NCBI GenBank assembly: GCA_964019335.1
Contig: OZ025690.1
Coordinates: 248,001 to 312,000, forward strand
Source: Diplonema japonicum
Lineage: Eukaryota; Protista; Euglenozoa: Diplonemea
Direction of reading: 5' to 3'
Length of the DNA: 64,000 nt
Positions 19,466-59,880 of the stretch are shown piece after piece (the first letter of the stretch is position 1; the number at the start of each line of letters is the position of its first letter). Made by a program: the position numbers and the translations under genes. The notes under the pieces are model-generated. The model had not been told where the DNA came from and made no database searches. It saw only the letters and a program-made list of their open reading frames with translations.

Positions 19466-19555
19466 TTTTTTTTTTTTTGCGTAAAACACTGTCGAATATA
19501 GGTTTTTCTTTTGACTAGTTCTCGTTCATCACAAAAAAAAAGGGGGGGGGGCTTT

Positions 19556-19648
19556 GATTGCAACACTAGGTGGCGTTAAGCGTGCAACAAAAAAAAAAAA
19601 AAAAAAAAAGAGACATTTAAGGGTACCTGCGGTATGTGGCAGGACGCC
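19556..19648 (-). mobile_element. Chained orphan retroelement-like 3' tails (tail 3, poly-T, tail 2)
   Basis: 19610-19648 equals 23759-23797; 19556-19588 equals the 3' ends of the elements at 40512 and 41451. Confidence 0.7.
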
Positions 19649-26707: not shown

Positions 26708-27274
26708 TCTATTTTTTTTTTTTTTTTTTTCCTTTTTTGTTTCTAACCAAAGGTTTGTGTTGTGAAACATGAAACAAAAGATGGAGAAGCAAACATGAAC
26801 GTTCTTTCGTTGTGCGGGAGGGAAAAAGAGATAGGGGAAAGGAAAGAAAAAAATTGGGAAAAAACAGTCTAACTTTGTTAAATGGTGGTGGTAAAGGGTA
26901 AGAAGCGAGAAGGAAATCAGATTGTTAACAGAAATAGTCTACGTAAATAAAGAAGAAGGTTTGCGAGAGGAAGGAAAGGACAATAAAAGAAAAAATCGTC
27001 GGATAAAATTCTTCTTAGAAAGGGCTTCATTCTCCTTCACATCAAGGTGCCACAAGGTGACGGCCCCTTTAAGGGAGTAGAAGAGAAAAGCAAAGAAAAA
27101 GGCCAATCTGAGTCGACAGTCGGCTCCAAAGTGTACCATAAAGCACTAGTAGCACATGGGGTGGTTTACGACACATTTCGAGTGCGCTTCGAATCTGTGG
27201 TCACCACTCAGACATGTTAACGCTGCCAAATATTCTTTTTGAAACAACAATAAAAGTGTTTCTAAAAGAATAAA

Positions 27275-27631
27275 TTCACTATGATAGGAACGAAGTGGTT
27301 AGCAACGGCTACCGCCAATAAATTATATACAAGAGTTGAAGGAGGCCGGTGTTGGCGGCGCCCTGCACCAGAACTGTCTACTTGATCACAGAGGCGCACC
27401 GTAGCCGAGTTGTAGCTTCTTCTGCGTCCGCATCGTGTCCTTAATGCGTGCAGTGTGCAGTTCAACCCTAGCCGGGGCGTCCCGGGTAACCAAGATTAGG
27501 CGCTCATGCAGTTTGCTACCTGTTCTTCGTCACTCTTCGACTCAGGCGCTACCGGTGATAACTGACGTGGAGGTCAACAGCGAATAACACATTTGATGTA
27601 CTTCTTATATTCCCATGTTGTCCCCACCACC
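27275..27631 (-). mobile_element. SINE-like family A element (degenerate HDV-like ribozyme head, LINE tail 1)
   Basis: Homologous to 40545-40828 but ends in gttgctaaccacttcgttcctatcatagtgaa, the 3' end of the LINE at 34880. Confidence 0.8.
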
Positions 27632-27954
27632 ATTTTTAAATAACGCTCCGTATCCGTTAAGTGTCACAACAGAAATCGCAAAATTACGGGGCTACAACAA
27701 AATTTCCAATTGCTTTTTCTCAGGCTGGAATGGATTCATTTGCGTCCGGGACATTTCTTTTTTGATCTTTCCTTCGTGTGGCCCTGGGGGGGCCTAGGGG
27801 AGAACCACTATGGACAACGGTCGGGTCACTTAACGGATGCGGAGCGTAAAAATAAAGACCACCTCGTGCATTAGGTTAGAAAAGAACGGGGTCTTAGGAA
27901 ACAGGGGGGTCAAAGGAAACGAAGAAAAAACCAATTAAACTCTTCGAATTTCAT

Positions 27955-29208
27955 TTACAACCCATTGCTGTGGCGGCCCTTCAGAGCATCCAAATATGAC
28001 ATAGGCAACCCATTGCTGTAGCGGTGTTTCGCTTTGCCTCTCCTGAAGTGGCCTACATGGCAGGTTGTGTTGTCCCTCTCATCTTGTGCATTCACATCAC
28101 AAGAGGCTTCGAGCAAGAGTTCAGCGATTCCTGTATTTTTAGCAAGGTGAAGAGGTGTTTCGTTTCCACAGGTCTTTGCATTCACATCCGCACCCCATGC
28201 GAGCAAAGACGAGACAACATCGATGTGGCCTTGCTGCGAGGCATTGTGAAGGGGTGTCTTATTATCATCGCTGCTGTTCACATAGTTGACAGCTGCACCA
28301 TGTTGCAGGAGGAGGGATGCTGCTCCGGCACTTTTGGCATATTGAAGGGGACTGGCTCCGCAAAAGTCAATCAGGTTCGGATCAGCAGACTTCTCGAGAA
28401 GCAAGGCGATGATACCAATGCTGTTCCTTTGCGTTGCTAATATGAGAGGAGTATCGCCAATTCGATCTTGCAGGTTCACCCCTGCACCAGCCTCGAGTAA
28501 CATCGAGATGATTTCGATACTGCAGAACTCCACAGCAAAATTGATTGGATCGCAGCAATAGCCATCTATGTGAGCACCAATCGACAGTAAGAACTGAAGC
28601 ATTGCAACCTGCTGACCGGCCACTGCTTCGCAGAGCACACTGTACATGTCTGCACCAGCAACCAGAAGGAAATCAACACACTGGATGAAGCCCCGATGGG
28701 ACATGTTGTTAACCAGGTTGCGTTTCTCATCATCATTGCACATCCCTGCCTCCATCATCGTGGCCAGCACTTCACATAGCTTACTGTCCAAGTCCTGCCG
28801 GCCCTCAACAGAGAGTTGTTCGTCGTTTTGTAGAGTTTCGGAAGAGATTTCAGTTTCGTAAGAGCGGGATGTTTCATCCTCGTCCGCCCAACCTTTTCCA
28901 GATGTGTAGTTAGCGAGGGACATTACACCCTTGCCTGCCCAACCCAACTCCTTCAGACGATGAAGTGCCACCTCTTTCTTGCTCAAGACCAGCTGCAGCT
29001 CACTCCGATCCCCAAAGGGAAGCTCCCCAACGAGCCTGCCGTCACTGTCACCGAACACCTCCCCTTCAAAGGAGAGGTCGAAGGTGTTGACGCACATCCC
29101 GGACTGCGACGCCACCCTTTCCTTCAAGCCCGCCAAGCTCTCCATCGGGCCTACCTCCACTTCCATCCACTCACCTCCAGGGTGTTGCACCAACAGCTCA
29201 ACTGACAT
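27955..29208 (-). CDS. Ankyrin-repeat protein with N-terminal ubiquitin-like domain (short paralogue)
   Basis: Near-identical N-terminus to the 26707 gene with fewer repeats; tandem duplicate. Confidence 0.9.
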   Translation of the reverse strand: MSVELLVQHPGGEWMEVEVGPMESLAGLKERVASQSGMCVNTFDLSFEGEVFGDSDGRLVGELPFGDRSELQLVLSKKEVALHRLKELGWAGKGVMSLANYTSGKGWADEDETSRSYETEISSETLQNDEQLSVEGRQDLDSKLCEVLATMMEAGMCNDDEKRNLVNNMSHRGFIQCVDFLLVAGADMYSVLCEAVAGQQVAMLQFLLSIGAHIDGYCCDPINFAVEFCSIEIISMLLEAGAGVNLQDRIGDTPLILATQRNSIGIIALLLEKSADPNLIDFCGASPLQYAKSAGAASLLLQHGAAVNYVNSSDDNKTPLHNASQQGHIDVVSSLLAWGADVNAKTCGNETPLHLAKNTGIAELLLEASCDVNAQDERDNTTCHVGHFRRGKAKHRYSNGLPMSYLDALKGRHSNGL

Positions 29209-29327
29209 CTTATTCTTTTTTTTCCTTTTTTGTTTCTTACCTAAGTGGTGTGTGTTCGTGTTGTGAAAAGCATGAAACAAAAGACGGGGAAGCAACATGA
29301 ACGTTCCTTTTATTCGTTTCACGGATG

Positions 29328-30206
29328 TTACAAGACACAGATTTCGGGGATCGAGCACCACTCACCTTTGGCAAGCCCGGTCCGGGTGAAAAGTCTCGGC
29401 TCAACAGGCTTGCCAGGGCCGTGCTGTACTGCGGTCCCAAAGGCCTGGGTGTTGTAGAAGGCGAAGAACGACCAGACAAGAGAGGCGTCGTCGCGGCGGG
29501 CGAATATCCCACCACAGGGGGTCTTCTTGGTGCGGCAGAAGTCGACGATTGTGGCTTCTGCTGTCGAAGGTGAGAATGTGAGACGCGCAGCCAAGAGAGA
29601 CGACATGGCGTCTTCACCGCGCCCAGAAAGTGCGGCTGCCGAGGTGGGTGTTGCCCAGCATCCTGCTCCTGGGTGCCCGGCTTCACCTATACGGCCGACG
29701 GGCTTCCCTTTGTACCCACCGCTGGAGACGGTTACAACAGACTGATGCTCGCGGGTAATAATAACCCCTATTGTGTCTTCTTTGTCATTGGGTGAATGCG
29801 GTGAAGAGGAAGTGTGACTGCAACCCCCCTTTGATAGCATCACAGGTGCAAGGGTTTTCTCCCCGGTGTTGTTGCGTTGCTTGGCAAGCCGAATTGCCTC
29901 AGCTGAGGGGTTTTTCGCACTGCACCTGACCACACACCCGAGTAACCCTTCGCTTGTGACCGCTGTTGCGTCCCCTTCTGCCTTCCCTTCCTCGTTCCTG
30001 TTCCCGCCCGCACCCGCATTTGTCTTCCCGGAGTCCTCCAAGGTTGTCATCACCGCCTCCGCTGCATCCAGCAGTTCACCGTTATTTTCCAACATCAACT
30101 CTCCCTTTTTGCAAGCGGCTTTCATTAAGGTTTTGAGGTCGTCGGCCTCCAAGTGTCCAGGGTAGCTCCCCACCCCAATGTGAAGCGAGATCGTCCAGTG
30201 CGCCAT
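29328..30206 (-). CDS. Ntn-hydrolase of the asparaginase-2/taspase family
   Basis: LHIGVG, LEDSGKTNAG, D-TIG nucleophile site, SSGG...KPVGRIG, SGRGE. Confidence 0.88.
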   Translation of the reverse strand: MAHWTISLHIGVGSYPGHLEADDLKTLMKAACKKGELMLENNGELLDAAEAVMTTLEDSGKTNAGAGGNRNEEGKAEGDATAVTSEGLLGCVVRCSAKNPSAEAIRLAKQRNNTGEKTLAPVMLSKGGCSHTSSSPHSPNDKEDTIGVIITREHQSVVTVSSGGYKGKPVGRIGEAGHPGAGCWATPTSAAALSGRGEDAMSSLLAARLTFSPSTAEATIVDFCRTKKTPCGGIFARRDDASLVWSFFAFYNTQAFGTAVQHGPGKPVEPRLFTRTGLAKGEWCSIPEICVL

Positions 30207-30318
30207 TGATCTGCTTTGGGGTAGCGGGTGGGAGAGAGAAATGGGTGTCCTTTTTTCTTCTTCTTTTTTTTTCTTCTTCTTCTTTTAATCTTTTTATAAC
30301 TTTCCCCCCCCCTTTTTT

Positions 30319-31545
30319 TTATTTCGTGGTGATTCGCTTCACCCAATCATCCGTGTAAGGAGGCCTCCCGTTGTATGTATGGCACCAGTATTTATTCGCC
30401 TCCTCGTGAGACCGCTTTGCAATGTCGATCCCAGCGAACCTCCAGTACTGCTGAACGCTGCGTTCAGTGCCCAGCCCGTATTTCTCGGCCTCAACCGTAA
30501 CATATGCCTCTTTGGTGTCACGGGGCACAATTGTGCGTGATGGGTTTCTTGGGTCGGGCAGCTCCAGCAGATATTGAACTCTCCTTGCAGACCTTGACTG
30601 ATGGGTGGCCCAAGAAGGCAGAGTCTCCATCCTCGGTTTCCCGCTTCGATAGTAATGGTGGTAAAGTATATTGTCGCCGGGGGAGAAGAAGTCGTACCCG
30701 TGGGTCCACAGCCGGACTGTCATTAAGATTTCCTCGCCATGGAAAAGGAAAGGAAGATGCGGATCGAAGGGAACCTCGTGGACCATGCTACCATGGGTAA
30801 AAACAAGCCCCGCTCCCACGTACGGCTGAGGCCGGTTCGTGTTCTTAACAACCTCGTAGACAGCACCGGAGAAGGGCCCAGGATAACCGTGCCCATGCCA
30901 CATCGCGTTCCCGCACAGATGTGCTACGTAAGGCTTCGAATCGTAGTTTTGAACACCTGGCTGTGTTGCCATTGGGTAGACGGATAGAACACACTTCTCA
31001 GAAGTGCAAACATCGTGGTGCTTGATGATAAGCTCGTCCCAATGCGTTACGAATTTGTTGTGAGAATCTATCATCATGAAGTAATCCTCTCCTTTGTACA
31101 TAAGGCTGGCACGGTGGCGTGCGTAAGTAGGGCCTTTAGCTTGTTGAGCATCCATGTCCTCAAGGGTTATGTTAAACTTTTCGATGTCGGATGCAGACCA
31201 CTCAGGTGGAATGCAAATTTCGTCGTCGGACTTAATGTCACGTTGGCAAACGATTCCGATGTGGATTCTTGTGAAGTTCTTCGCTTTTTTGCGCATGTCT
31301 CGAAGGGTTTCTTGGGCCTCGTTGTCCCTGAACGCGGCGATATTGACGAAAATGGTGCGCTCGTCGCTCGGTTTGTCAATGTTTCGCCTCGACGGCCCCC
31401 TTTTCAGCACAGCTGCTCCAGAAGTGTGAGGCGACGCAAGATTTCCCTGATCCCCCGAAAAATTACCATGCATAGCGAGCACCCAAATCAATGTGGCAAC
31501 TCCCGGAGTGATTACCAGTAGCAATTTTTTTGTTTTGTTGGCCAT
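30319..31545 (-). CDS. GT60-family GlcNAc transferase (Skp1 Gnt1 / polypeptide alpha-GlcNAc-T-like), type II membrane protein
   Basis: IFVNIAAFRD, AKGPTYAR, MIDSH, VPFDPHLPFLFHGEEI, RLWTHGYDFFSP, YGLGTERS. Confidence 0.92.
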   Translation of the reverse strand: MANKTKKLLLVITPGVATLIWVLAMHGNFSGDQGNLASPHTSGAAVLKRGPSRRNIDKPSDERTIFVNIAAFRDNEAQETLRDMRKKAKNFTRIHIGIVCQRDIKSDDEICIPPEWSASDIEKFNITLEDMDAQQAKGPTYARHRASLMYKGEDYFMMIDSHNKFVTHWDELIIKHHDVCTSEKCVLSVYPMATQPGVQNYDSKPYVAHLCGNAMWHGHGYPGPFSGAVYEVVKNTNRPQPYVGAGLVFTHGSMVHEVPFDPHLPFLFHGEEILMTVRLWTHGYDFFSPGDNILYHHYYRSGKPRMETLPSWATHQSRSARRVQYLLELPDPRNPSRTIVPRDTKEAYVTVEAEKYGLGTERSVQQYWRFAGIDIAKRSHEEANKYWCHTYNGRPPYTDDWVKRITTK

Positions 31546-32124
31546 ATATATTTATTTTTATATTTCCCTTTTACACACCCCCCCCCTACCCTCTTCCTCT
31601 TTGTGGGTTAGAATGGAAAGTGAAGAAAAGCAGAGGAGGAAAAAAGAAAGAAAACAAAAAAAGAAGAAAGGGGTAAAAAAAAAGAAAAATCTATCTATTT
31701 GAAAGGAGGGTCTAATAGGAAAAAAAAAGGGGGGGGCGTGGGTGGGAAGAAGAGGGGGAGAAAAAAAAAAATAGTGGGGAGGGAAAAGAAGGGAGAAAAA
31801 AAAAATAGATTATTGACACGGTAAAGGGGGAAGGAGTGGGAACTGGGGAAAGGAGAAGGAGGGAGAGGGGAAGAGCAGGCAATAGGGCCCGTCTTTTTTT
31901 TTTTTTTCTCTTTTTTTTTCTTCTTATGGTTAACCAATATTTTATCCACTAACAGCGCTGGCCTTGTAAATGCAGATCACACCTCTTTTCTCTTTGTTGA
32001 TCATTTACATTAACAATTTCTTTTTTCTTTTGCTAATCATGAAAAATAAGAGGATAAAAAAAAGGGAGGGAGGGGGGGAGAACATAAAAGAAGAAAAATG
32101 GAAATGTACAAAAATCTAGCAACA

Positions 32125-32159
<35 letters not shown>

Positions 32160-32174
32160 TAAAATCACCACACT

Positions 32175-32227
<53 letters not shown>

Positions 32228-32239
32228 AAAAGAAAAAAA

Positions 32240-34452
32240 TCACTCCACTTTTTCCGCCTTTTTAGCACGAATGCGAGAGATGAGCTCTGCCTTGCTACCG
32301 TTCAACTGTTATAAAAATGGGGGGTATATAAAAATATTTTTTTTTTAAAAAAAAATTCTCACACCTTAAGGCCAAGGTCTTTAGCAGCCGCTTTGACCGA
32401 CTTGAACTCCTGGCTGTCGAGGTCATCATCGGGCGAATCCTGAGCCTCCTCGTCTTTTAAGGCCTTGTTAGGTGAGGCCGCTGGGGTGTCGAAGAGCTCG
32501 CTCTCTTCCTCATCTTCGTTGACGTTGATGTCATCTTCATCAACAGCACCGAATGTGACCGATCGCCTTACGGGCAACGACCGACGCTTCTTGTTAGGCG
32601 GTGAGACTTGTTCGGCGTCTTCCTCATCATTGCTGATCATAGAGAAGTTCCTCCTCCTAGCTTGCCTCTGCAGCTTCGACTTGAGCAGTTCGTAGTCAGT
32701 GCGGTAGTTATTTGCGACGGTTTCAAGCTTCTTAGTCTCTGCGTTCATTGAGTCGATCCTTTCGTTGGCCTGGGCAATGAGGGCTTTCTTGCTTTTCTTC
32801 AGTTCCCTGATGTCCTTGTCCTTTTGCTCCACTTTCCCTCTGAGCTTCTCAGCGATAAGGGTCTGCTTCTTTGCGTTGTGCTCTTCGCACCTCACCTTGT
32901 AGTCCAGGTCTGCGTTCGCCTCCTCCAGTGTCTCGTTCTCCCTGGAGATCTCCTCGACTCTTTGCGCGAGCTCATCGAGTTCTAACTTGTTCGCCTTTAC
33001 TTCTTTCTCTACCTTCTGAACCTTTCTCTTGTAATCCTTGACTTGGTCTTTTAGTTCTTCGTTTTGCTGTTGCATTGTCAACGCGGAGTTCTGTGCTTCT
33101 TTCATGCTTTTCGCATCCTCCGTTTTCATGTTCTCGTTGGCCGCCTTCAGCCTCTCGTTCTCCTCGTTCAAGTCCTCGATCTGCGATTCGAGCTCCGCCT
33201 TCGCGTTCTCAAGATCCCTGCTCTCGTCCTCCTTCAGTTTTAGTGCTGCTTGTGCGTCGACGACGTGGTTCTTCGCGGCGGTCATGTCCTTCCTGTGCTT
33301 CTCGACAAGGCTGTGCTGGTCCTTCTTCTCCTTTGAGATCTGTTCCGTCTTAAACCCAAGCGCCGTGTCCTTCTCGATAATGTCACTTTCGAGTGCGTCG
33401 ATCTTGTGAGTGAGCTCCGAAACCTTCTTCTGAGCTTTTTTCAGCTCCGCCACCACGTCTTGGTGGGTGTCCTTGTGTACTCTGGTTTCCTCTTGAAGCT
33501 GTTCAAGCTCAGCGGAGAGGGCGTCTGCTCTGTCAAGAACCTGTTGTTTGGATTCGGCAAGTGCGTCGTGTTGTGTTTGCGACTTCTGGATGCGTGCTGT
33601 GAGGCTGTCGACATGTTCGGTTTTCTCGTCGAGTTCCAATGTGAGGCTTTCGATCTTCTCGTTGAGGGACTTTGCGTGCGCGTCGGCTTCGTCCCTTACA
33701 TCGGAAAGCGTGGCACGAAGCGCTACAAGGTTGCCCTCAGCTTGCTCGTACTTGTTGTTGGTTTCGGCGACATCTTCGTTGAGTTGGTGGAGGCGGGTTT
33801 CAAGAGTTTCGTTGGCGTTGTGTAGGTCGTCGTGTGCTGCGGTGAGGCCTGTGTTTTCGTTCTTAGCGTTGAGGAGCTTCTGCTGGACTGCTTCGTACTG
33901 TTCTATCATCTGCTGCAGTTTCGCGTCGGTGGTCTCCTTGTCGCCTTGCACGTTGTCGAGGGTTCCGAGGAGCTCGTCCATTTTAAGTTTCAACTCGTTC
34001 TCGCCTTTGAGCTTTTCTTCTTCCTCCCGTTTGGCTTTTCTCTCAGTTCTGTCTACCTCGCGCTGGTTGCGGGCTAGCTTTGACTCCAGCTCTGCGACCT
34101 TCTTGAAGGCGATGATGTGTTCGTCTTCTTTTTTTTGCCTGGCGCGGCGTTCTTCTTCGAGCTTTTCGTTGGCAGCTTCAAGTTGGAGCTTCGACCTGTT
34201 AACCTCAGCCTTCACTGCCTGGTACTCGCTAAGGCTTACAGTCGCCGAGCCTACAGCACCGATTTTGTTAGGTGCGCTTGGCATCGTTGACATCCTGGGC
34301 ATCAGCGACTTTCTACCCATTGCGGGGCTTATGTCGAATGTGCTCCCCGGTGCGAACGACCTCCTCCCAGGCCTATACATGCTGGGCAACGGCTGTGGCT
34401 GTGACGGCATGGCACGTTCACCCGGTGTTCCCGGTACAGCAGAGGCGGGCAT
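32240..34452 (-). CDS. Long coiled-coil nuclear protein with NLS, RVxF motif and C-terminal SAP-like domain, 2 exons
   Basis: Intron 32306-32364 yields ...VKAAAKDLGLKLNGSKAELISRIRAKKAEKVE*. Confidence 0.8.
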
Positions 34453-34879
34453 TTCTTTTTTTCTTCTTTTTTTTTTTTGTTGTCGTGTGTTTTTTTTTTT
34501 TTACCTTTTTTTTATTTTGAATTTTTTTTTTTTTTGGTGTGATATTGGTAAATAAAGAAAATTGAAGGGGATGGGGGGGGAGCCTTAAAATATATAATAT
34601 AATAACGGGGGGTGTGGGGGTGTATACAAATAAAATGAACAGGTTTTTTTTTCTTTTTTTTTCCCCTTCCTTTTTTTTTTCTTCTCTGATAAAAAAAAAA
34701 GTGCATTTCTTATTTCCATGTGTGGAAGAAGGGGGGGGGGGGTAAAACAAAGATAAAAAAATAGATTGAGGGAAATGGTGGGGTGAATAGAATGCAGCGA
34801 AGGAGAAAAAAAAATGAATGAAACAATGCCATTTTACCGGGGCACGGGTACAAAGAAAGAAGAAAAAAAAGAAAGAAAA

Positions 34880-36760
34880 TTCACTATGATAGGAACGAAG
34901 TGGTTAGCAACCCTTTTGGGGTCGTTCCCTGCTACCCACCGTAGTGCCTAGCTGTCGTTTATATCTTCCAATCCTTTCTTTCCGGTAATCTTCTCTCAGT
35001 CCTTTCAGCTTCGCCGTCAGCCCCGATGCAAACAGGGCCCTCCTATCAAAGCCAACGACGTGGTCGCGGCCAATGGATCGTAGTGATCTCACGTTCTTGC
35101 ATGACTGCGCCGGAAAAGCGCGTCTCCTCTTCTCCCTCATCCATGTCGCTTGCAGCGTATCCAGGATCCGCTTGATCCTCACCGCCTTCTTGTCGATGTC
35201 AATCGTCGTGTTGATGTTAACCCCCAGCGTCTTCTTCGTGTAGCACTCGAAGTCAATCGCCAGCTCGATCGCCGACACGGACGTTCCCTCCTCCGCCCAC
35301 CGCAGCGCAGCCAGCCATCTCAGCACCTGATCACCATACTCCCTGAGCTGCGGGGTCAGCTTGAGCTTGTACAGTTCCACAACCTTTGGCGCCTCGAAAC
35401 GCCTTCCTTGAGTCGTCACCATCCACGGCGGTTCCTTCTCAACCGCGAACCGCTTCACCACCAGAGCATCGTCCCTGCGCCTCACCACCTCTGCCAAATA
35501 CCTCTGCAGCCTCTCCAAACCGCGGAACACGACCTTCCTCGGGAGAATCCCGTGCAGCTCCAAACAGACCGGCCACCTTTCGCTCCTGACCAGACCGGTA
35601 TATACCTCCTTCTTCTGCACCTCCAATGCGACCTCGCACTCCCAAAGCTGGTGTCGCAGCAACCTAACTGTGCTGCCCTTCGCAGCATCACAGACATCGC
35701 AATTGAGCGTTCCCGCTGCTTTGTCCGTCCTCCCCCTATCCAGGTGGTCGGCTTCTTCCTCGCTCCCTTCACCTCCCTCCTCATCAGGTTCTTCAGGAGG
35801 GGAGAGTAAAACTTGTTTCGCATACGGGCTGAGGTACGGCACCGCCCCGGCGATTATCCTCCTCACCCGCCACGCTTCGAGCGGTCTGCGTGCGCTGCAC
35901 TTCATCCAGTAAGCGTTCGTTGCAGGGGCCGCGCCCTTCCCAAGCCCGGCCATCGTGCTTCGCGTCTTCACAATACCCGATGTCCTCATCCTCCGCAGAG
36001 CCTCCCTGAGGTCGTGCCCAGGATTCTCTCCTCTGTGCCAGCTTGCCAGCCTTTCCCACTTACCCGATCGCCGGGAGCCACCTCAGAAGCACATTTCCTA
36101 CGACCCCCCTCGGCCTCACCTGCCCAGAAGTTCCGTACGCCTGTGCCAACTGCGTCCATGTTGCCATTGCCCCGTCCTGCCTCAGCCAGCACCTCCTCAG
36201 CATCATCAAAGCACTGTACACTACGGCACACAGCGGGTCCACCCGGTGCGCTCGCGCCAGGATTGACAGTACCACGTCTGGAGATCTTCCTCTGTAGTGG
36301 GGGCCCCACAGGCACTTCACGATCGATCCTTTAAGCTGACTGAGACTCTAGTCACTCGGCGGAGAGAAGCTCGAGCTGTATAGCAGTCCCGGCATAATAT
36401 GAGTTCTGATGAGACTCTCCTTCCTCTGAAAAGAGAGCTGGGTCGAAGCCAGCCTTTCCACTTTCTGTCTTGCAGTAACCGCGGCATCGTTCCAGCTCGT
36501 GCCGCATGCTGTCGTGTTCAGCATAGTTCCCAAGGCCTTATGCTTGTCGACCTTGTTGAGCCTTACCTTCCTTCTTCTTCCGTCCACCTCACTATCCTCC
36601 TCGCAGTTGAGGTCCCCAATCACCACGATCGGCACGTCTCCCAGCTCTATTCGCTTCCTGACCAGAATGTGATGCAGAAGTTGCTCCCGTTCCCTGGCTT
36701 GCACTGCCTCATTGCCAGCTGGTCAGTAGACGTTCAAGAAAAGAAACCACACCCATGCAC
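34880..36760 (-). mobile_element. Internally deleted, decayed APE-type LINE
   Basis: APE remnants LNVY.P and PIVVIGDLN fused directly to post-RT thumb-like KALG...LIRTHIMPGLLY; CDVC...HQLWEC knuckle; ELAIDFE; tail 1 at 34880-34911. Confidence 0.8.
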
Positions 36761-36937
36761 CCTAATCGATTGTAAATGGTGGTGCGAAAAAAAAAGAAAA
36801 GTTAGAATGAGGTAAAGAATGAAAAATGAATCATCATTGCCCCCCCCCCCCCCCCCCCCCCCAGAAATATTCTTTTATTTAGGAAATACGGCGCAATAAT
36901 CGTACCGACGAATACGGTGCTTTAAAAGAGGAAAACA

Positions 36938-37046
36938 GCCGTTACTTGTGTGCACCGGTGGGAAGCCTGGAGAAGGTTATAACCCGTAAACTCATGGCTA
37001 ACGCTCCCCTTTTGTTTAGACAAGTCAAAGACACGGTCTTGCAAAC
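36938..37046. repeat. Dispersed repeat, second copy at ~56512-56617
   Basis: Shared cctggagaag...aacccg...cccttttgtttagacaagtcaaagac...tcttgcaaa. Confidence 0.75.
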
Positions 37047-37116
37047 AAAAAGAAAATAAAGATTTAAAAACCTGCAAAATCTTGCACAAATTGCATAAGG
37101 TAATAAAAAAGCTGGA

Positions 37117-37170
<54 letters not shown>

Positions 37171-37661
37171 ATTGGCCAATCCAAAGCTATCGATACTACG
37201 GCCACTCTTCTTTTTTTTTCTTTTTTCTTTTTTTCTTCTTATTCTCTTCCTTCTTTGTTGGTGGCAAGACTGAAAATAAAGGGGGGGAGGGTTTATTGCC
37301 ACAAAAAATGGGGGGGGTTGCACCACCCCCCTTTCCATAAGCTCAGAAGCAATAATGGATTTTCTTTTGTTTGATTGTTGTTTTTCTTTTTTTTTTTTAA
37401 TGTTCTCTCCAATAAAAAAAAAAAAAAAAAAAAAAAAGAAACCATGATGATAGTACACCCATCATCAATGTTTGCTTACCCCTCTCTGCCCGTACGTTAT
37501 GCGTCTATTTTCTTTTTAAATTATACCCTTTAAAATTACTCTTTGGGCCTTTTTTTCACATGCAAAAGACACATTAACCTGACAAATAATTTCAGCGTGT
37601 CGTGAACAAAAAAAATACTCCTTATTTTACCGCCAAATATATATATTGGCCTTACTGGGGG

Positions 37662-38284
37662 TAGGGAGGGTCACATGGGGGTGGTAAAGTGGGTTTTTTT
37701 CAAATTCGGAAATGCAGAGTACTGGGGCCGCCTAATGTAAAACACCCCTTTCTCGACCAAAAAATCGATTTCCGCCGGTTTTTTTTACTTTTGGGCAATC
37801 TACAAAGCATTATTTTGCATTTTTAAAAAAGGTGACCACGGTTTGGTACCTGGCCTGTTGTTTCCCCTGTAGTTTCTGAGTTTTCTGAAAATTTTGGAAT
37901 TTGACCATGGTTTGTTCCACTCTTTGAACGCGCTCTTTAGGACGCCGCTACCGTTTGAACGGCAGAGTACTGTCTTACATTGTCCGATTGTGAACCTTTC
38001 TGTGTTTTGCGCGGCATTTCTGATGAATATCTATCATTTTCCCGAGGTTAGGATGGTAAGTTTGTTTTTGCAAATATTTTCAGGTACCAAACCGTAGTTA
38101 CTGTTTTCAAAAATACAAATAAAGCATTAACAAGTGCTCAGAAATGCTCTAATCCGGCGAATTTTGATTTTTTGGTTAATTTGGAGGGTATTGGTCGGTT
38201 ATTTTTTTACCTTAGGGGAAAATCTTTTTAAAAAAACTTTTTTTTCACGTTTAACCACGTTTTTTTAGGACCATGTGACCTCCT
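37662..38284. mobile_element. Foldback/MITE-like element with long imperfect inverted repeats
   Basis: Perfect 15-bp IR acggtttggtacctg (37838) / caggtaccaaaccgt (38081), ~80 bp of flanking imperfect IR, outer ggtcacatgg / ccatgtgacc. Confidence 0.65.
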
Positions 38285-38464
38285 AGGGCTATGCTGGCAG
38301 GAAACGTGGAAACGTATCCGTTTCCGTTTCCATACTTTTCAAGATTCTTATGGAAACGCGTTTCCTTCTTAAGCAAACGTAAGGAAACGTTTCCGTTTTC
38401 GTATCCGTTTCCCTTTTTTTTTAAAAAATGCATGGAAACGCGTTTCCATGCCAGCATACCTAGG
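38282..38464. mobile_element. Small MITE-like element
   Basis: TIR tatgctggca / tgccagcata flanked by cctagg on both sides; interior built of ggaaacg/cgtttcc units. Confidence 0.7.
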
Positions 38465-38692
38465 GGGGGGGGGGGGGGAGTTATTATTTGCTGTATCAGT
38501 AAGCAGCTATTTTGTTTTGTTTTGTTTGGATTAAAAAAAAATAAATAAATAAATAAATAAAAGGGTGCATGCGGCCATTTTTCACTGAATAATTCAATAG
38601 TTTGCGAATAATAATTATAAAAAAAAGGGATTTTCTTTCTTTCAGTTTTTCTGTTTTTTTTTTCTTTTTCTTTTTTTTTTACTTCTATTTAT

Positions 38693-38744
<52 letters not shown>

Positions 38745-39529
38745 CTCCCCAAATTCACTTACGGTTTTTTTTCTTCTTTTTCTTTTCTTCTTTTGGTATA
38801 ACTTAAAAAAGCTAGAAAGTACTCCTACAATAATGGGAGAGAAAAGCGTTGGGCAACGGTGGGCACCATCGGACCCCTCCCCCCCCCCTTTTTTTCAGAG
38901 CAATTTCTTTTTTTTTTAAAGGGGGGAAGATGGACCACAGTCATCTACAGTGTCAAAAGCAAGAAATTGGGCTCACAGGCAGGCAGTCCAACTTAATCGG
39001 GACTGCAACAATTATGACTTGTGATGACTGTGGGGTGAATCTTTCTTTTTTTCTCTTTCCAAAAAAAAAAAAAAAAAAAAAGGAACAAACCAGAAACTAA
39101 GGACAGAGAAAGAGGGGAGAATACCCTCCATATATTTCTCTTTGTGTTTTCTTTTTCATCTTTTTTTTTTCATTTTCTTTCATTCTGAATAAAAAAAAGC
39201 AAAAAAAAAAAAAAAAAAAACGGCATACGTTTTCCCCAACCTCCCTTTTTTCTTTTGTGGGAAGGAAGAGGGGGGGGGGGGAGAAAATACCCCCCTCCCC
39301 CTTCTTTTTCTTTCTGTCATTGTGTGGATTTTCTCTTCTTTCCCCTCCCCCCCCCCCCCCCTTAGTCTCTTGTCTCGGTACAAACATTTCTCTCTCTTTT
39401 CTTTTTTTTTTTTCTTTCCGGCCGAGCAAAGATACCAAGGAACGAGAGGATTTAAAAGAAGAAATAAAAAAAAACTCATAGTAAAAGGCAATCCCACTGG
39501 AGGACAGCCTCTTGTGGTGTGAGTTCCTA

Positions 39530-39569
<40 letters not shown>

Positions 39570-39572
39570 GCA

Positions 39573-40274
39573 TCACCTTCGCAGCAACTGGCTATACCGG
39601 GTTGGGGTAGTTGTACTGAAGGGCCGAGGTGTGTTCCGCACAGGGGTGTTGCATGCCCGTTCAATCTTTTTTTTTTTTTTTTTTTTTTTTTTTCCCCAAC
39701 ACACCAATTTATAAACCTCCCTCACCTCCGGTGATGCTATAGACGCCACCGAGACACGGTGATGACTGGGGGTCAGAAACGCTTTTTTTTCTCTTTCCTT
39801 TTCTTTTTCCCTCTCTCTCCGCTTAACGGCGGCTGCAGCATCTGCCTTTAGTGCTTTCTTCACAATGTCAGCACCAGTTGTGCAGCGTTGAGGTAGAAGA
39901 GGCGTGGCAGGGGGCGTCGATGACCTTGACTGTGCACATAGAGATCTTCGTGATCCAGCAGGTGGAGGCGTCATGGTCCGTCGGTTTCGAGATTCAAGTT
40001 TTGTAGGTGTCAACGGAAGTTTCATTTGTGTGACCTTCTCTTCTTCGGCCTCCTGCAGCGCTTCGACCAGCGCGAAATTTAAAGGGAATCCCCTCTCTGG
40101 CTCACGGCAGAGGGCCCTGCAGCAAGGGCAGCTTACGGAACAATCCCCTTTCCGCCTCTTCATCACCATCGACAGGCATTTGCTGCAAAGCGTGTGCCCG
40201 CAGCCAAGCAACCTCGGCAGTCGGGCGTAAGGCTCGGTCGCATAACTCACCAAGCACACCGGGCATTCTGGCAT
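39573..40274 (-). CDS. RING-finger protein (probable in-frame intron 39666-39716)
   Basis: CPVC...PRLLGCGHTLCSKC...CPCCR...NFAL. Confidence 0.88.
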   Translation of the reverse strand: MPECPVCLVSYATEPYARLPRLLGCGHTLCSKCLSMVMKRRKGDCSVSCPCCRALCREPERGFPLNFALVEALQEAEEEKVTQMKLPLTPTKLESRNRRTMTPPPAGSRRSLCAQSRSSTPPATPLLPQRCTTGADIVKKALKADAAAAVKRREREKEKEREKKAFLTPSHHRVSVASIASPEVREVYKLVCWGKKKKKKKKKIERACNTPVRNTPRPFSTTTPTRYSQLLRR

Positions 40275-40511
40275 TTTCTTTTTTTTTTTTTTTTTCTCCC
40301 AAAATGGGCTGAACACCCACCCTCCCCCAGCGCCTTCTGTGATAAAAGGTAATGTGAAGATAACGAATAGAAAAAGAAATGGGGGGAGGGGGGACAAAGT
40401 AAAATAATAGTATGGGGGAAAACTTTTTTTTTAAAATCCCCCCCATTTTTTTTTTTTTTTTTTTTTTACTTAATAAAATCCGGAGAAAAAGAAAAAGGAA
40501 AAAAAAATGGG

Positions 40512-40828
40512 GATTGCAACACTAGGTGGCGTTAAGCGTGCAATGAAGCACGAACTACCTACTTGATTACAGGGGGCGCTCCTCGGCCGAGCAGTAGCTT
40601 CTTCTGCGTTCCGCGTCGTGTCCTTAATGCGTGCGGTGTGCTCAACCCTAGCCGGGGCGTCCCGGGTAACCAAGATTCTGCGCTCGTGCAGTTTGCTGCC
40701 TGTTCGTCACCCTGAGCATCTGCGTTACGTCCTTCCACTCAGGCGCTACCGGTGATGACCGACGAGGAGGTCAACAGCGAACAACACATCTGATGTACTT
40801 CTTATATTTTCATGTTATCCCCACCACC
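40512..40828 (-). mobile_element. SINE-like family A element, most intact copy (HDV-like ribozyme head, tail 2)
   Basis: Homologous to the 27275, 41451 and 42362 copies; all four start at GGTGGTG. Confidence 0.85.
40691..40828 (-). ncRNA. Predicted HDV-like self-cleaving ribozyme (family A)
   Basis: P1 GGTGGTG/CATCACC; P2 GCTGTTG/CAG(G)CAGC; P3 ACC/GGT; L3 TCCTCGTC; P1.1 CC/GG; P4 CCTGAG...CTCAGG; J4/2 ACGAA with catalytic-C equivalent at 40706. Folded by hand. Confidence 0.8.
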
Positions 40829-41062
40829 TTAAAAAATAAAATGAAATACCCCCCCCCCCCCCCTTTTACTCTTCGGGGGGGTTTTTTCTTCTTCTTTTGC
40901 ACATGGGGTAGAGGCGCGATAATGCGAGTGTGTTTTTTTTTTTTTTTTTTCTCTTTTTTTTTTTGAGGTGTTTTCGTGTGAATTTTGGAGCATTTCGGGG
41001 CGGTTTCCCTTCTTTATATGTATATATTTTCTTTTTCCTTTCATTCTTTGCTTTTCACTTGG

Positions 41063-41106
<44 letters not shown>

Positions 41107-41450
41107 TGAGCAAGGTTTTTTTTTTTAAAAAAAAGGAAAAGTATTACCATAGTTTTTTTTCTTCTTTTTGCGGGGTGAAAGTGTTTTGAGTAACGGCCTA
41201 TCACCCCCCCCCCCCCCCCCCCCATCTGAAAGAACTCGTTTTTTTTTTCCAAACCGCCCCAGGCTTGTGGCACACCAGTCCACCCGAAAATACACACACA
41301 TTCTCAGTACCACTACTACCCATGCTTTTTTTTTTTTTTTTTTTTTTTTTTGTCATCCCCGCCGCCCTCCCTACACGGTTTTCATGAAACCGAACAACGC
41401 AGTCTCTGTAGAAAGGGGGGGAAAAAGGGGGGGATACAAATAGGGCTTTT

Positions 41451-41663
41451 GATTGCAACACTAAGTGGCGTTAAGCGTGCAACGAACTAACTACTTGATT
41501 ATATGGGGGCGCACCGCGGCCGAGCTGTAGCTTCTTTCTGCGTTCCGCGTCGTGTCCTTAATGCGTGCGGTGTGTAATTACCGGTGATGACCGACGAAGA
41601 GGTCAACAGCGAACAACATATATTTGATGTACTTCTTTATATTTCCATGTTATCCCCACCACC
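41451..41663 (-). mobile_element. SINE-like family A element with internal deletion, tail 2
   Basis: Same head and tail as 40512-40828; P4 to P2' and part of the body missing. Confidence 0.8.
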
Positions 41664-42192: not shown

Positions 42193-42361
42193 AGAAAAAA
42201 AAAACCGACGTCACAAGCATGCAAATACCGCGTGTAAGCCGCAGGGGAAAAAAAAGGGGGGGGGGAAAGGGGGAAAAAAAAAACTACAGTCATATTAGTG
42301 TGCAATGACAAACGCCCCTTCTCTCGCCTCTCGAGAACAAACAAATAAACAAAAATGAAAT

Positions 42362-42471
42362 CTGTAGCTTCTTCTGCACCCTGAGCATCTGCAATACGTT
42401 CTTCCACTAGGGTGCTACCGGTGATGAAAACACCTGATGTATTTCTTTACATCTCCGTGTTATCCACCACC
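42362..42471 (-). mobile_element. Degenerate family A fragment
   Basis: GGTGGTG start, catcaccggtagc, gcagatgctcagggtg and gcagaagaagctac retained. Confidence 0.7.
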
Positions 42472-42900
42472 AAAAAAAACATCACTATTGACTTACCTAA
42501 AAAAAAGCTCCCCCCCTTCCCCCCCCCTCCCACTTGGACACCGAATAGAAAAGTGTAAGCAGTACGCATAAATTAAAAAAAAGAAAAAAAAAGAAAACAC
42601 ACACTAATCCCGTTATTTACCCCCCCCCCCCCTCCCATTCTTTTTGCTTCCGTGGGGGTGGCTCTGCATGTAATTTCCCTACGGCAAGCACAGCATGCCT
42701 GAGGTTAAAAAGATCGTTTTTTTTTTTTTGTTTTTTTTTTCTCACTATGATTGGAGGGAGAGGAGGGGGAGGGAAAGGGGGGGGGGGGGAGAGGAAAAAA
42801 AAAAAAAAAAAAAAAAAAAGAAAGAAAGAAAAATGAGTTCAGCTACAGCAACTCTAACCCTATCATCACCCCCACCAAATTTTGAAGAAAACAAAGTCAA

Positions 42901-57627: not shown

Positions 57628-57698
57628 TTCACTATGATAGGAACGAAGTGGTTAGCAACGGCCCGCCGCGGTGGCGTGCCTACCTTATGATGCTCCCC
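57628..57698 (-). mobile_element. Short insertion ending in LINE tail 1
   Basis: Exact ttcactatgataggaacgaagtggttagcaac on +. Confidence 0.7.
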
Positions 57699-58146
57699 TT
57701 TCTTAAATATTTATTTTTCAAAGAAATGATGTTATAACTAAATGCAACTTGTGCCGGGCAAAAAACTTTCGCAGCTTTTTTTTTTTTCTTCTTTTTTTTT
57801 TTTTTTTTTCCTTTCTGCTCAGACACAAGTTGCATATAGTTATAAAAAATTGTTTTTTGAAAATGAATTTAACACAACTCAAACGGCGTCAGTACGACCA
57901 CCAGACGGCTCCAAGTGTCCCATAGAGTACATGGGGTGGGGGTTTTTGTAGCCACTACGGCGCCACCTCTCAGACATGGCGTGCCTGGTCTCACCCCTGT
58001 TTTGAGGTCTTTTAGTGTTTAGTCGACAGTTGCTCCGCCGCTTACCAAAAAGGAAAAAGAAAGAAGGAAACTTCCTCCTCCCCCCCTTTTTTTTTTGTTG
58101 TTGGAACCAGGAGTAGTAATCATGGCGCCAAAATGTTTCTATTTAA

Positions 58147-59536
58147 CCATCTACCAACGAGTGTCTTTATAAACACGATTTGAAAAAAAATCTTTTGCGC
58201 AAAGGGCTTTCAATGCAATAAGGCCCGGCCGAACAATGTGGCAAATGCGGCTAAAAAAGGTGTTACCCTGGATCTCGATGCTGCTTCTCTGCATACCTTC
58301 CTAGGTGCCCTTTTGTCGATGGACTTGGATATCAAGCCAGATTATTCTGATTACTGGTGCACTAGTTCCACGCCTCTCAACCACACCCCTGGGTACGCCA
58401 CCGTCATGTCAAGAGACCGCTTTTTGACTATTCTGAGAAATCTGTGTTTCCACAGCGAAACAAACAAGCGTGCTGACTTCTACCTTTCGCAAAGGCCTCC
58501 CGGAGATCACGGATGCCCCAAAGAAGCGAGGCCGCAAGCCCAAGGACGCGCGTCCTGTGGGGACACCCAGTTCCACCAGCACGTGAGCATCCTTTGCACC
58601 ACAACGTGGCATGACATCAAGCCTGAGCGCTTTCTGTCGACGTTGGATGTTCTGGTGAAGTCAAATTTGACGTGTCGGCCAAAAGAGAATGAAAGCCGGA
58701 AAGGACATCCTGCTCCCCACCAAGTGCATATTTACAACACCGCAATGGGCGGAACCGACGCTGGGTGACGCTGTGACAAAACGCCATAAACGCACCCTTA
58801 TGACTTCGAAGTGGCCCCTGAAAGTATTTTCGTACTTGTTAGATAAATCTCTGGCAAATGCCTAGCTCGTTTGGAAAGAAGCATTGCCCCCCAACACCCT
58901 GAGTACGAACGACAGTGGATTCACGCCTTTCAAAGAGGCAGTCATCGAAGGGCTACTAGGGAGGCTGTTTAAACAACAGCTAAAGTCAACTACAGAGCAG
59001 GCTGCCCCAATACCATGCCCCGAAACACAGAACGAGTGCCCTGGGACCCCAATGTGCCGTGACAGTACCTTCTGGGACCATTTCCCCGAAAAAGTAGCGC
59101 AACGTGCGGTACAAGCATGGCAAGTCGAAATGACCCCAGTTCCAGTGTTCAGTCTGCTTGGTACAACTTTGCGTGACTCCGTGCTTCAAAGACTACAACC
59201 TTCCAGGAATACCCCCCAAAAACCCCTCTCGGGGTCAAAAAAGAAGTCCCCCAGCCCTGGGGCACATACGAACCGCGTCAAGAAGGCCTTAAATAGCTTT
59301 TTATAGAATTTTACAGTCGATTTTTTTTTGACTTGTTTTTTGTACCCCCTCTCGGGCACTTCAGGAACGATATTTTTGGAATGTTGTGGGGGTGGGCTGG
59401 GCACCCTCTCTCTAGAATTGGGACATCTGGAGGCATTTCCGGGGGCATACAGCCCCGGCGTTGCGCTAGAATAGTTTTTTTTTGAAGTTTTGAAAATTTA
59501 CCCCCTGGTAGGCAAAAATGGTCCGTTGGTAGATGG
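58147..59536 (+). mobile_element. Decayed piggyBac-like DNA transposon
   Basis: TTAA-ccatctaccaacg ... cgttggtagatgg-TTAA; transposase remnants MSRDRFLTILRNL, YNTAMGGTD, KWPLKVFSYLLD and a Cys-rich C-terminus, broken by deletion, stops and frameshifts. Confidence 0.9.
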
Positions 59537-59552
59537 TTAAAAAAAAAAAAGA

Positions 59553-59603
59553 TTTTCACTATGATAGGAACGAAGTGGTTAGCAACGGCCCGCCAAAAGG
59601 GGG
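59553..59603 (-). mobile_element. ~50-nt tail-1 retro-insertion with target-site duplication
   Basis: Flanked by direct repeats ggtagatggttaaaaaaaaa..ga (from 59528 and 59604). Confidence 0.75.
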
Positions 59604-59880
59604 GGTAGATGGTTAAAAAAAAAGAAAAAAAAAGAAGAAGAAAAAGAAATAAGGCCGATATTCGCACTATTTCAAGACCATTTTACGCTCCACAATCGTA
59701 CTTCTTGGCCTTCAGTGTTGTGAAATGAAGTAAAATTGAGGAGTGCAATAATGTTATGAATATCGAACATAAGCCTTTAGTAACCAGGCAAAGAGGGGAA
59801 AAAGAAAAAAAAGAAGAAGAAGAAAAAAAGAGACATTAAAAAAAAAAAAAGAATATCGAAGTGGAGAGGAAAAAAGGTGG

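What the first reader, a model, noticed from the sequence alone, without database searches (positions are those of the whole stretch)
27275..41663. Same ribozyme head and body, interchangeable 3' tails: a modular element using different partner LINEs
Seen: the 27275-27631 copy ends in tail 1 (gttgctaaccacttcgttcctatcatagtgaa), which is exactly the stop codon plus 3' UTR of the LINE at 34880-36760. The 40512 and 41451 copies end in an unrelated hairpin, tail 2 (ttgcacgcttaacgccacctagtgttgcaatc). Known: stringent-type SINEs share 3' stem-loops with the LINE whose RT mobilises them. Inference: one ribozyme-headed RNA has swapped recognition tails and can hijack more than one RT family.
Basis: partly seen in the sequence, partly recalled or inferred. 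Interest (0 to 1): 0.85.

Follow-up and report, generated by a model that had tools for sequence, protein, structure and literature searches.

The report
Ribozyme-headed SINE with two tails
A short jumping element of a diplonemid-like protist comes in two versions that share a self-cutting-RNA-like front and body but end in different 45-50-base tails.

Summary
The sequences are real, but the key reading is wrong. The 27275-27631 copy is not "body + tail 1". It is an old copy of SINE family B with its own tail (tail 3, 27323-27370). A separately inserted 42-nt, 5'-truncated 3'-UTR fragment of LINE-1 follows it (27275-27316), flanked by its own TTTATT duplication.

Genome-wide, only 5 of about 490 tail-3 ends carry such a fragment, each at a different junction. 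No copy joins the body directly to tail 1. Tail 2 (family A, 40508-40828 and 41441-41663) ends no RT-coding element in the assembly.

A corrected form of the idea survives:
- Families A and B are 95% alike over 270 nt of head and body, then carry unrelated 45-50-nt 3' modules.
- B's last 17 nt plus (TA)n equal the 3' end of an autonomous APE+RT LINE (LINE-3).
- LINE-3 itself starts with an HDV-like fold.

The closest precedents are R2/R1 hybrid SIDEs, NARTc/L1Tc and tail-swapping SINE superfamilies, so this is a new variant of a known kind. The scan has already noted these SINE/LINE families elsewhere in this genome. Self-cleavage and RT recognition of the tails are inferred, not shown.

The parts
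27371..27631 (-). Head and body of an old, decayed family-B SINE copy. G1 of the predicted ribozyme is at 27631. P4 is partly deleted and P3 has a mismatch.
   Evidence: 82-86% identity to 20 other B copies; 87% over the shared 270 nt.
27323..27370 (-). Family-B 3' module (tail 3): ..TGGTGCAGGGCGCCGCCAACACCGGCCTCCTTCAACTCTTGTATATAA.
   Evidence: The same module ends 20 of 20 fetched B copies. The 34-mer occurs 490 times genome-wide.
27317..27322 (-). Upstream copy of the TTTATT target-site duplication of the tail-1 fragment.
   Evidence: Read directly from the sequence.
27275..27316 (-). 42-nt 5'-truncated copy of the LINE-1 3' UTR (the 'tail 1' mini): GGCGGTAGCCGTTGCTAACCACTTCGTTCCTATCATAGTGAA.
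   Evidence: Matches the last 40 nt of intact LINE-1 copies L061 and L062.
27269..27274 (-). Downstream copy of the TTTATT target-site duplication.
40508..40828 (-). Young family-A SINE copy. The A-specific 3' module (tail 2) is 40508-40551, with a 5-nt deletion before the final CCCCA.
   Evidence: 40 genomic copies at 93-100% identity, 39 of them 98% or more. True end ..GCAATCAAAGCCCCA.
40698..40828 (-). Predicted HDV-like ribozyme. P1 is nt 1-7 with 72-78. A 49-nt insert sits in J1/2. P2, P3, L3 (UCCUCGUC), P1.1 and P4 follow, with a C-G-A-A motif before the 3' strand of P2.
   Evidence: 25 proposed pairs are 98% paired in 25 copies, with no covariation. Weak Rfam HDV_ribozyme match: 13.3 bits, E 8.7. 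All full-length copies start at this G.
41441..41663 (-). Older family-A-type copy with an internal deletion and a diverged tail 2.
34880..36760 (-). Dead LINE-1 copy. It keeps an APE fragment and the C-terminal 361 aa, has lost the RT region, and has a 38-nt deletion that fuses the frame to tail 1.
   Evidence: Intact ORF2 is 1451 aa with APE and RT domains.
57628..57702 (-). 75-nt 5'-truncated LINE-1 3' end.
59555..59594 (-). Solo 40-nt tail-1 mini with a 19-bp target-site duplication (59529-59547 and 59605-59623).
19546..19588 (-). Solo tail-2 mini behind a T-run.
42360..42472 (-). Decayed SINE fragment (head with deletions).

Best explanation
The window holds copies of one roughly 320-nt non-coding retroposon (a SINE) of a diplonemid-type genome.

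Every full-length copy starts at the same G. Its first ~131 nt fit an HDV-like self-cleaving ribozyme. The likely life cycle, which is inferred, runs as follows: read-through transcription inside the host's gene clusters, self-cleavage that sets the 5' end, then target-primed reverse transcription by a LINE enzyme into T-rich tracts.

The SINE has two subfamilies. They are 95% alike in head and body. Just after ..CAAGTAGNNAGTTC they switch to unrelated 3' modules:
- Family A ends in tail 2: ..TTGCACGCTTAACGCCACCTAGTGTTGCAATCAAAGCCCCA.
- Family B ends in tail 3: ..AGGGCGCCGCCAACACCGGCCTCCTTTAACTCATATAT(AT)n.

B's last 17 nt plus the (TA)n are identical to the 3' end of an autonomous APE+RT LINE (LINE-3). 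LINE-3 has one reading frame of 2036-2185 aa and its own HDV-like 5' end. It is the probable driver of family B. A's driver is unknown.

The copy at 27275-27631 is an old B copy. Its 'tail 1' is a separate 42-nt abortive (5'-truncated) insertion of LINE-1, a different APE+RT LINE with a 1451-aa ORF2. The fragment landed in the T-rich stretch just behind the B copy. All these elements integrate at T-runs, and each insertion is followed by a T-run, so truncated copies often stack behind older ones.
For: Family structure:
- 20 of 20 fetched relatives of the 27275 copy end in tail 3, not tail 1.
- A and B are 95.1% alike over 270 nt (A within-family 97.7%, B 96.6%).
- With the body anchor fixed, only these two tail types exist genome-wide.

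Partner of family B:
- Six LINE-3 copies end in ..CTTCCTTTAACTCATATAT(AT)n plus a T-run.
- LINE-3 carries APE and RT domains.
- Its 5' end fits an HDV-like fold: 26 pairs, 96.7% paired, one compensatory change in P4.

Tail 1 is a stacked insertion:
- Intact LINE-1 ends in ..GGCGGGCCGTTGCTAACC..GTGAA.
- Only 5 tail-3 plus tail-1 composites exist, against 490 tail-3 ends.
- The five have different spacers and truncation points, and each fragment is flanked by its own direct repeat, for example TTTATT, TTTATTT and TTTCTTTTTT.
- A solo mini in the window has a 19-bp duplication.
- There are zero direct body-to-tail-1 junctions.
- 5 of 24 sampled LINE 3' ends have another truncated element in their trailing T-run.

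Tail 2 has no LINE:
- 60 sites were read: 56 SINE copies and 4 minis.
- 72 non-canonical contexts were listed. Apart from one non-coding chance match, they read as SINE variants or truncated tails, and none follows a reading frame.
- 24 LINE ends showed six tail types, none of them tail 2.
Against: - No RNA data. The runs found are stored only as contigs and show no RNA ends. Transcription and cleavage are therefore not shown.
- The SINE ribozyme fold has no covariation support, because the copies are too alike. It pairs G1 with C rather than the usual U. Rfam gives only 13.3 bits.
- B and LINE-3 share only 17 terminal nt. The 23 nt before that are about 57% alike by eye. This shows common origin of the ends, not RT recognition.
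- Direct repeats in T-rich DNA can arise by chance. Two of the five are inexact.
- Tail-1 fragments behind B ends are about 5-10 times commoner than a rough random-T-run expectation.
- The screens for a tail-2 LINE needed near-exact matches, and the assembly may be incomplete.
Confidence: 0.8

Rival explanations
1. The 27275 copy is a functional chimera in which the SINE body has acquired LINE-1's recognition tail and is now moved by LINE-1's RT.
For: Tail 1 is identical to the LINE-1 3' end. The composite recurs 5 times. Three of the five share the variant CTCTTATAT, and two share a TTTATT(T) junction.
Against: The copy keeps its whole family-B tail. The five junctions and truncation points differ, and each fragment has its own flanking repeat. 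The flanks of the loci are unrelated. No body-to-tail-1 junction exists. No amplified subfamily was seen.
Confidence: 0.04
2. One-step chimera by template switching. LINE-1's RT copied about 40 nt of its own RNA, then jumped to the 3' end of a family-B RNA, so the composite was inserted in a single event.
For: Template jumps of this kind are documented for R2 (PMC3414825). The tail-1 fragments end at clustered positions 32-42 nt from the 3' end. The composites are commoner than a random expectation.
Against: A single event should leave no target duplication between the B end and the fragment. Repeats flank the fragment alone in at least 3 of 5 cases. Solo minis with clean duplications exist.
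Confidence: 0.1
3. The tails are not recognition modules. Any LINE of this T-run-targeting clade primes on U/T-rich 3' ends in a relaxed way, and A and B differ only through an old recombination with no change of partner.
For: At least six LINE families with unrelated 3' ends all sit before T-runs. Family A thrives with no LINE sharing its tail. The tails show no significant common fold.
Against: The exact 17-nt plus (TA)n identity of B and LINE-3, kept in two LINE-3 subfamilies that are only 77% alike, suggests constraint on that end. Each LINE family keeps a sharply conserved terminal motif.
Confidence: 0.25

Closest known systems
R2 SIDEs and R2/R1 hybrid SIDEs of Drosophila (Eickbush & Eickbush 2012, PMC3414825)
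   Same: Non-autonomous elements built from an HDV-like ribozyme at the 5' end joined to a LINE 3' end. In the hybrid class the same R2 ribozyme carries the 3' end of a different LINE (R1) and uses R1's machinery.
   Different: SIDEs are rare, rDNA-specific and clearly derived from their LINEs by internal deletion. Here the element is dispersed and has several hundred to over a thousand copies. It has a ~140-nt body of unknown origin, and its head is not significantly like LINE-3's. One of its two tails has no LINE counterpart.
NARTc/L1Tc, RIME/ingi and SIDER of trypanosomatids (PMC3185411, PMC3383444, PMC4035085)
   Same: Euglenozoan genomes with polycistronic transcription. An autonomous LINE and short non-autonomous elements both begin with an HDV-like ribozyme that frees the RNA from co-transcripts.
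   Different: Those pairs share the same 77-nt head and have A-rich tails. Here SINE and LINE heads differ in sequence, the elements end before T-runs, and the SINE has two alternative 3' modules. No sequence similarity to Pr77 was tested or seen.
SINE superfamilies with conserved cores and exchangeable LINE-derived tails, such as the HCD-tRNA SINEs of bivalves (PMC11481361; see also PMC5786205). CORE-, V- and Deu-SINEs are cited from my own knowledge.
   Same: One head and body, with different 3' tails that match different LINE partners. Tail replacement is seen as a way to survive partner turnover.
   Different: Those SINEs have pol III promoter heads (tRNA, 5S or 7SL). Here the head is a ribozyme-like fold, and no tRNA, 5S or 7SL similarity was found.

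Membership tests
SINE / non-autonomous non-LTR retroposon | Short, non-coding, dispersed, high copy number | tested here: met
   About 320 nt. The searches gave 1416-1833 first-look candidates, and 40 copies were scored at 93-100% identity (39 of them 98% or more) on many contigs.
SINE / non-autonomous non-LTR retroposon | Target-site duplications and 5'-truncated copies, as expected from target-primed reverse transcription | tested here: met
   Short T-rich duplications, for example TTTTAA in L051. Many 5'-truncated copies and 32-45-nt minis.
SINE / non-autonomous non-LTR retroposon | 3' end shared with an autonomous LINE (stringent type) | tested here: inconclusive
   Met for family B: 17 nt plus (TA)n equal the LINE-3 end. 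Not met for family A: no LINE with tail 2.
SINE / non-autonomous non-LTR retroposon | Internal pol III promoter head (tRNA, 5S or 7SL) | tested here: not met
   No Rfam match to any small RNA. The head is ribozyme-like instead, so the element works like a SINE but is not a classical pol III SINE.
HDV-like self-cleaving ribozyme | Nested double pseudoknot (P1, P1.1, P2, P3, P4) with the cleavage site at the 5' end of P1 | tested here: inconclusive
   All 25 proposed pairs can form (98% of cells), and the indels fall in P4, but there is no covariation. The copies' 5' ends coincide with G1.
HDV-like self-cleaving ribozyme | Match to a curated family model | tested here: not met
   Rfam HDV_ribozyme scores 13.3 bits against a gathering score of 50, with E 8.7. 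Nothing reached the gathering threshold.
HDV-like self-cleaving ribozyme | Self-cleavage activity and a catalytic C in J4/2 | not testable with these tools
   A C-G-A-A motif precedes the 3' strand of P2. Activity needs a bench assay.
   Zero direct junctions. There are 5 stacked composites with independent junctions and internal duplications.
APE-type non-LTR retrotransposon (LINE-1 and LINE-3 of this genome) | Endonuclease and reverse transcriptase domains in one long frame | tested here: met
   Pfam Exo_endo_phos and RVT_1 are found in both. Intact frames of 1451 aa and 2036-2185 aa exist.

The most novel reading that the evidence does not exclude
The stacked copies may be snapshots of how SINE tails get exchanged. 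LINEs of this clade often leave abortive 3'-end copies of about 32-45 nt ('minis') in the T-run behind an existing element. A SINE source copy that acquires such a mini and is transcribed through it gains a new 3' end and a new driver.

The clustered 5' ends of the minis lie within 6-8 nt of the point where families A and B diverge. That fits the idea that both tails were captured this way. On this reading the 27275-type composites are failed or not-yet-amplified first steps.
Probability: 0.25. Interest if true: 0.6.

Novelty: new variant of a known kind. Interest (0 to 1): 0.4.

Why it matters
The result corrects a tempting misreading: a nested insertion was taken for a modular swap. It also documents, in a little-studied protist lineage, a ribozyme-headed SINE with two alternative 3' modules, one of them tied to an identifiable LINE that has its own ribozyme head.

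This gives a tractable system for three questions:
- Do a few terminal nucleotides decide which reverse transcriptase moves a passenger RNA?
- How are tails captured?
- How do retroposons without pol III promoters live off polycistronic transcription?

If no driver exists for the young family A, that is an open puzzle.

Tried and rejected
- Rfam scans of the window and of the heads found no family at the gathering threshold. The only relevant match was a 13.3-bit HDV_ribozyme hit.
- Public runs hold this DNA only as contigs, with coded names and no RNA on record. Laying them showed high copy number but no RNA ends or empty sites.
- Folding the 3' tails gave no significant or shared hairpin: z -2.3 to 0.
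- The SINE head was compared with the LINE-3 5' end. The alignment score was z about 2 or less, so homology is not shown.
- The head and body were blasted against 20 RT-bearing loci from several LINE and LTR-like families. Nothing matched.
- One non-SINE site ending in AATCAAAGCCCCA (C42) was fetched. It is non-coding and a chance match.
- A screen for a third tail type on the same body found none.
I therefore could not collect all copies and cluster them, nor fetch full lengths of every LINE family. Counts come from pattern searches and samples.
- The organism name (Diplonema japonicum) comes only from earlier scan notes and was not checked.
Full report
**Setting.** The window is contig C43:248001-312000 of a 62.5-Mb, 132-contig assembly. 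Nearly all long reading frames lie on the minus strand, and the spacers between them are full of homopolymer runs. Earlier notes of this scan call the organism Diplonema japonicum. I did not check that. All elements discussed here lie on the minus strand, and sequences are given in that sense.

**Checking the observation.**
- BLAST of the three copies against the window confirms a shared body. 27371-27631 matches 40552-40828 at 82% over 280 nt. The 41451-41663 copy is the same element with an internal deletion.
- Tail 1 (27276-27307) is identical to 34880-34911 and recurs at 57628 and 59555.
- Tail 2 recurs alone at about 19546-19588.
- Genome-wide, tail 1 has 408 matches and tail 2 has 302 (two mismatches or fewer). 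The reversed-pattern controls gave none.
- So the strings are real and far beyond chance.

**What the 27275 copy really is.**
- Searching the genome with this copy gave dozens of relatives that matched only positions 1 to about 305-316 of the 357-nt query.
- I fetched 20 of them. Every one ends in ..AGTTCTTGTGCAGGGCGCCGCCAACACCGGCCTCCTTTAACTCATATAT(AT)n followed by a T-run. This is a third tail, tail 3, defining family B.
- The window copy has this tail complete at 27323-27370. After it comes TTTATT, then the 42-nt GGCGGTAGCCGTTGCTAACC..CATAGTGAA (27275-27316), then TTTATT again.
- Intact copies of the tail-1 LINE (LINE-1) have ORF1 plus a 1451-aa ORF2 with APE and RT domains. They end in ..AAGGTAGGCACGCCACCGCGGCGGGCCGTTGCTAACCACTTCGTTCCTATCATAGTGAA plus a T-run.
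- The 42-nt piece is therefore a 5'-truncated LINE-1 3' UTR.
- The window's own LINE-1 copy (34880-36760) is dead. The RT region is gone, and a 38-nt deletion runs the frame into tail 1.

**Is the composite a family?**
- A gapped pattern for tail 3 followed within about 25 nt by tail 1 finds only five places in the genome: C7, C28, C43 (the window copy), C91 and C110.
- By comparison, tail 3 occurs 490 times.
- The five have different spacers, different 5' ends of the fragment (GGCGGGCC, GGCGGTAGCC, GTGGGCC, GGGCC) and unrelated flanks.
- In each, the fragment is bracketed by its own direct repeat: TTTATT, TTTATTT, TTTTTT, TTTCTTTTTT and an approximate ATTTTTT.
- The solo fragment at 59555-59594 has a clean 19-bp duplication, so such minis insert on their own.
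- A pattern for the body joined to tail 1 within 35 nt finds nothing.

**Why stacking is expected here.** All these elements sit in front of T-runs.
- 5 of 24 sampled LINE 3' ends carry another truncated element in their trailing T-run.
- Tail 1 also sits just upstream of SINE heads in L002 and L006.
- L047 shows tail 3, a tail-1 mini and a tail-2 mini in a row.
- A rough estimate from T-run density gives 0.5-1 expected tail-1 insertions behind B ends. Five are seen. That is a mild excess I cannot explain.

**Tail 2 and its missing LINE.**
- The real end of family A is ..CATTGCACGCTTAACGCCACCTAGTGTTGCAATCAAAGCCCCA plus a T-run.
- Of 60 exact tail-2 sites that I read, 56 are SINE copies and 4 are solo minis of about 43 nt.
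- I then ran a genome-wide screen for the terminal 13-mer, excluding the SINE's base 41 nt upstream. It listed 72 sites.
- These were SINE copies with indels, minis and shorter stumps. One non-coding chance match was fetched and checked.
- The 3' ends of 24 members of the related LINE clade fall into six tail types. None is tail 2.
- Twenty RT loci of other families also lack it.
- Within the limits of near-exact matching and this assembly, tail 2 ends no RT-coding element.

**What survives of the idea.**
- Families A and B are 95.1% alike over the 270 nt of head and body. Within-family identity is 97.7% for A and 96.6% for B.
- They part just after ..CAAGTAGNNAGTTC into unrelated modules of about 51 nt and 44 nt.
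- With that anchor fixed, and the base shared by A and B excluded, only 21 sites remain. All are A or B variants, so there are just two tail types.
- Tail 3's last 17 nt (TCCTTTAACTCATATAT) plus the variable (TA)n and the T-run are identical to the end of LINE-3.
- LINE-3 has one frame of 2036-2185 aa with APE and RT domains and many intact copies. Two of its subfamilies are only 77% alike.
- The 23 nt before the shared 17-mer are about 57% alike by my own count.
- LINE-3 is thus the probable driver of family B. That is an inference from shared ends, not a demonstration.

**Ribozyme heads.**
- All 36 aligned full-length SINE copies begin at the same GGTGGTGGGG behind unrelated flanks.
- The first 131 nt can form an HDV-like double pseudoknot:
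  - P1: GGUGGUG with CAUCACC.
  - A 49-nt J1/2 insert.
  - P2: CUGUU with AACAG.
  - P3: ACC with GGU.
  - L3: UCCUCGUC.
  - P1.1: CC with GG.
  - A variable P4.
  - C-G-A-A before the 3' strand of P2.
- In 25 copies, 98% of cells pair and the indels fall in P4. Nothing covaries, and the fold was derived from these same sequences.
- Rfam's HDV model aligns the P3-L3-P1-P1.1-P4-J4/2 core at only 13.3 bits.
- LINE-3 begins at GGGGCUGG behind a T-run. Its first ~116 nt fit the same architecture, with a canonical G1-U pair and one compensatory plus two one-sided changes in P4. It has no Rfam hit.
- The two heads are not significantly alike in sequence.
- Cleavage is unproven for both.

**Comparison with what is known.**
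- A ribozyme head joined to the 3' end of a different LINE is exactly what the R2/R1 hybrid SIDEs are (PMC3414825).
- Ribozyme-headed LINE/SINE pairs are known in trypanosomatids (PMC3185411, PMC4035085).
- SINE cores with several LINE-derived tails are well documented (PMC11481361, PMC5786205).
- The combination seen here is a new variant rather than a new kind: a dispersed, high-copy, ribozyme-headed SINE with two tails, in a T-run-targeting LINE clade of a diplonemid.
- Earlier follow-ups of this scan reached similar readings of the same families on other contigs.

**Open points.**
- Which enzyme moves the young family A.
- Why minis of all three tails stop 32-45 nt from the 3' end, close to the A/B divergence point.
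- Why all ten element pieces in the window point the same way as the genes.

Noticed in passing
genome-wide; in the window at 59555-59594, 27275-27316 and 19546-19588: All three tails have many solo 'minis' of about 32-45 nt behind T-runs. Their 5' ends cluster, and the cluster lies within 6-8 nt of the point where SINE families A and B diverge.
   Followed up: partly
L036:1912-2030, L034:1682-1800, L037:2223-2300: LINE-3 starts right behind a T-run with a sequence that fits an HDV-like ribozyme and overlaps its start codon. The fold has a G1-U pair, a 6-7-bp P2, and P4 with one compensatory change between subfamilies. No Rfam hit.
   Followed up: partly
L061-L072, L076-L087 (3' ends of LINE copies): A clade of APE+RT LINEs has at least six unrelated but sharply conserved 3' ends. 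All are followed by T-runs instead of poly(A). 5 of 24 have another truncated element stacked in that T-run.
   Followed up: partly
L036:1620-1880: This LINE-3 copy sits inside a Fe/Mn superoxide-dismutase-like reading frame (FHYNKHHKGYVTKLN..NHTFYW). The long open frame therefore reads from host gene into element.
   Followed up: no
window 19546-59623: All ten SINE and LINE pieces found in the window lie on the minus strand, like nearly all long ORFs. Yet long T-runs are not commoner on that strand (77 against 103 runs of ten or more).
   Followed up: no
L046 (upstream of its tail-2 mini) and L063 (downstream of its LINE end): Another repeated 3' end, ..AACGGTGAGCACCC(ACCC)GCACACCGAAAT(C/T)TATCA.. 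followed by a T-run. It is probably a further retroposon family.
   Followed up: no
window 34904-34915: The window's LINE-1 copy lacks 38 nt (..AAAAGGG^TTGCTAACC), so its frame ends at a TAA inside tail 1. Intact copies stop at a TAG 36 nt upstream.
   Followed up: yes
window 39954-40160 and 40508-40828, run X12 (organism C): Contigs of a run labelled as a different organism hold the SINE at 90-99% identity and the neighbouring gene with 9 differences in 207 nt. A related strain or species seems to carry the same family.
   Followed up: no
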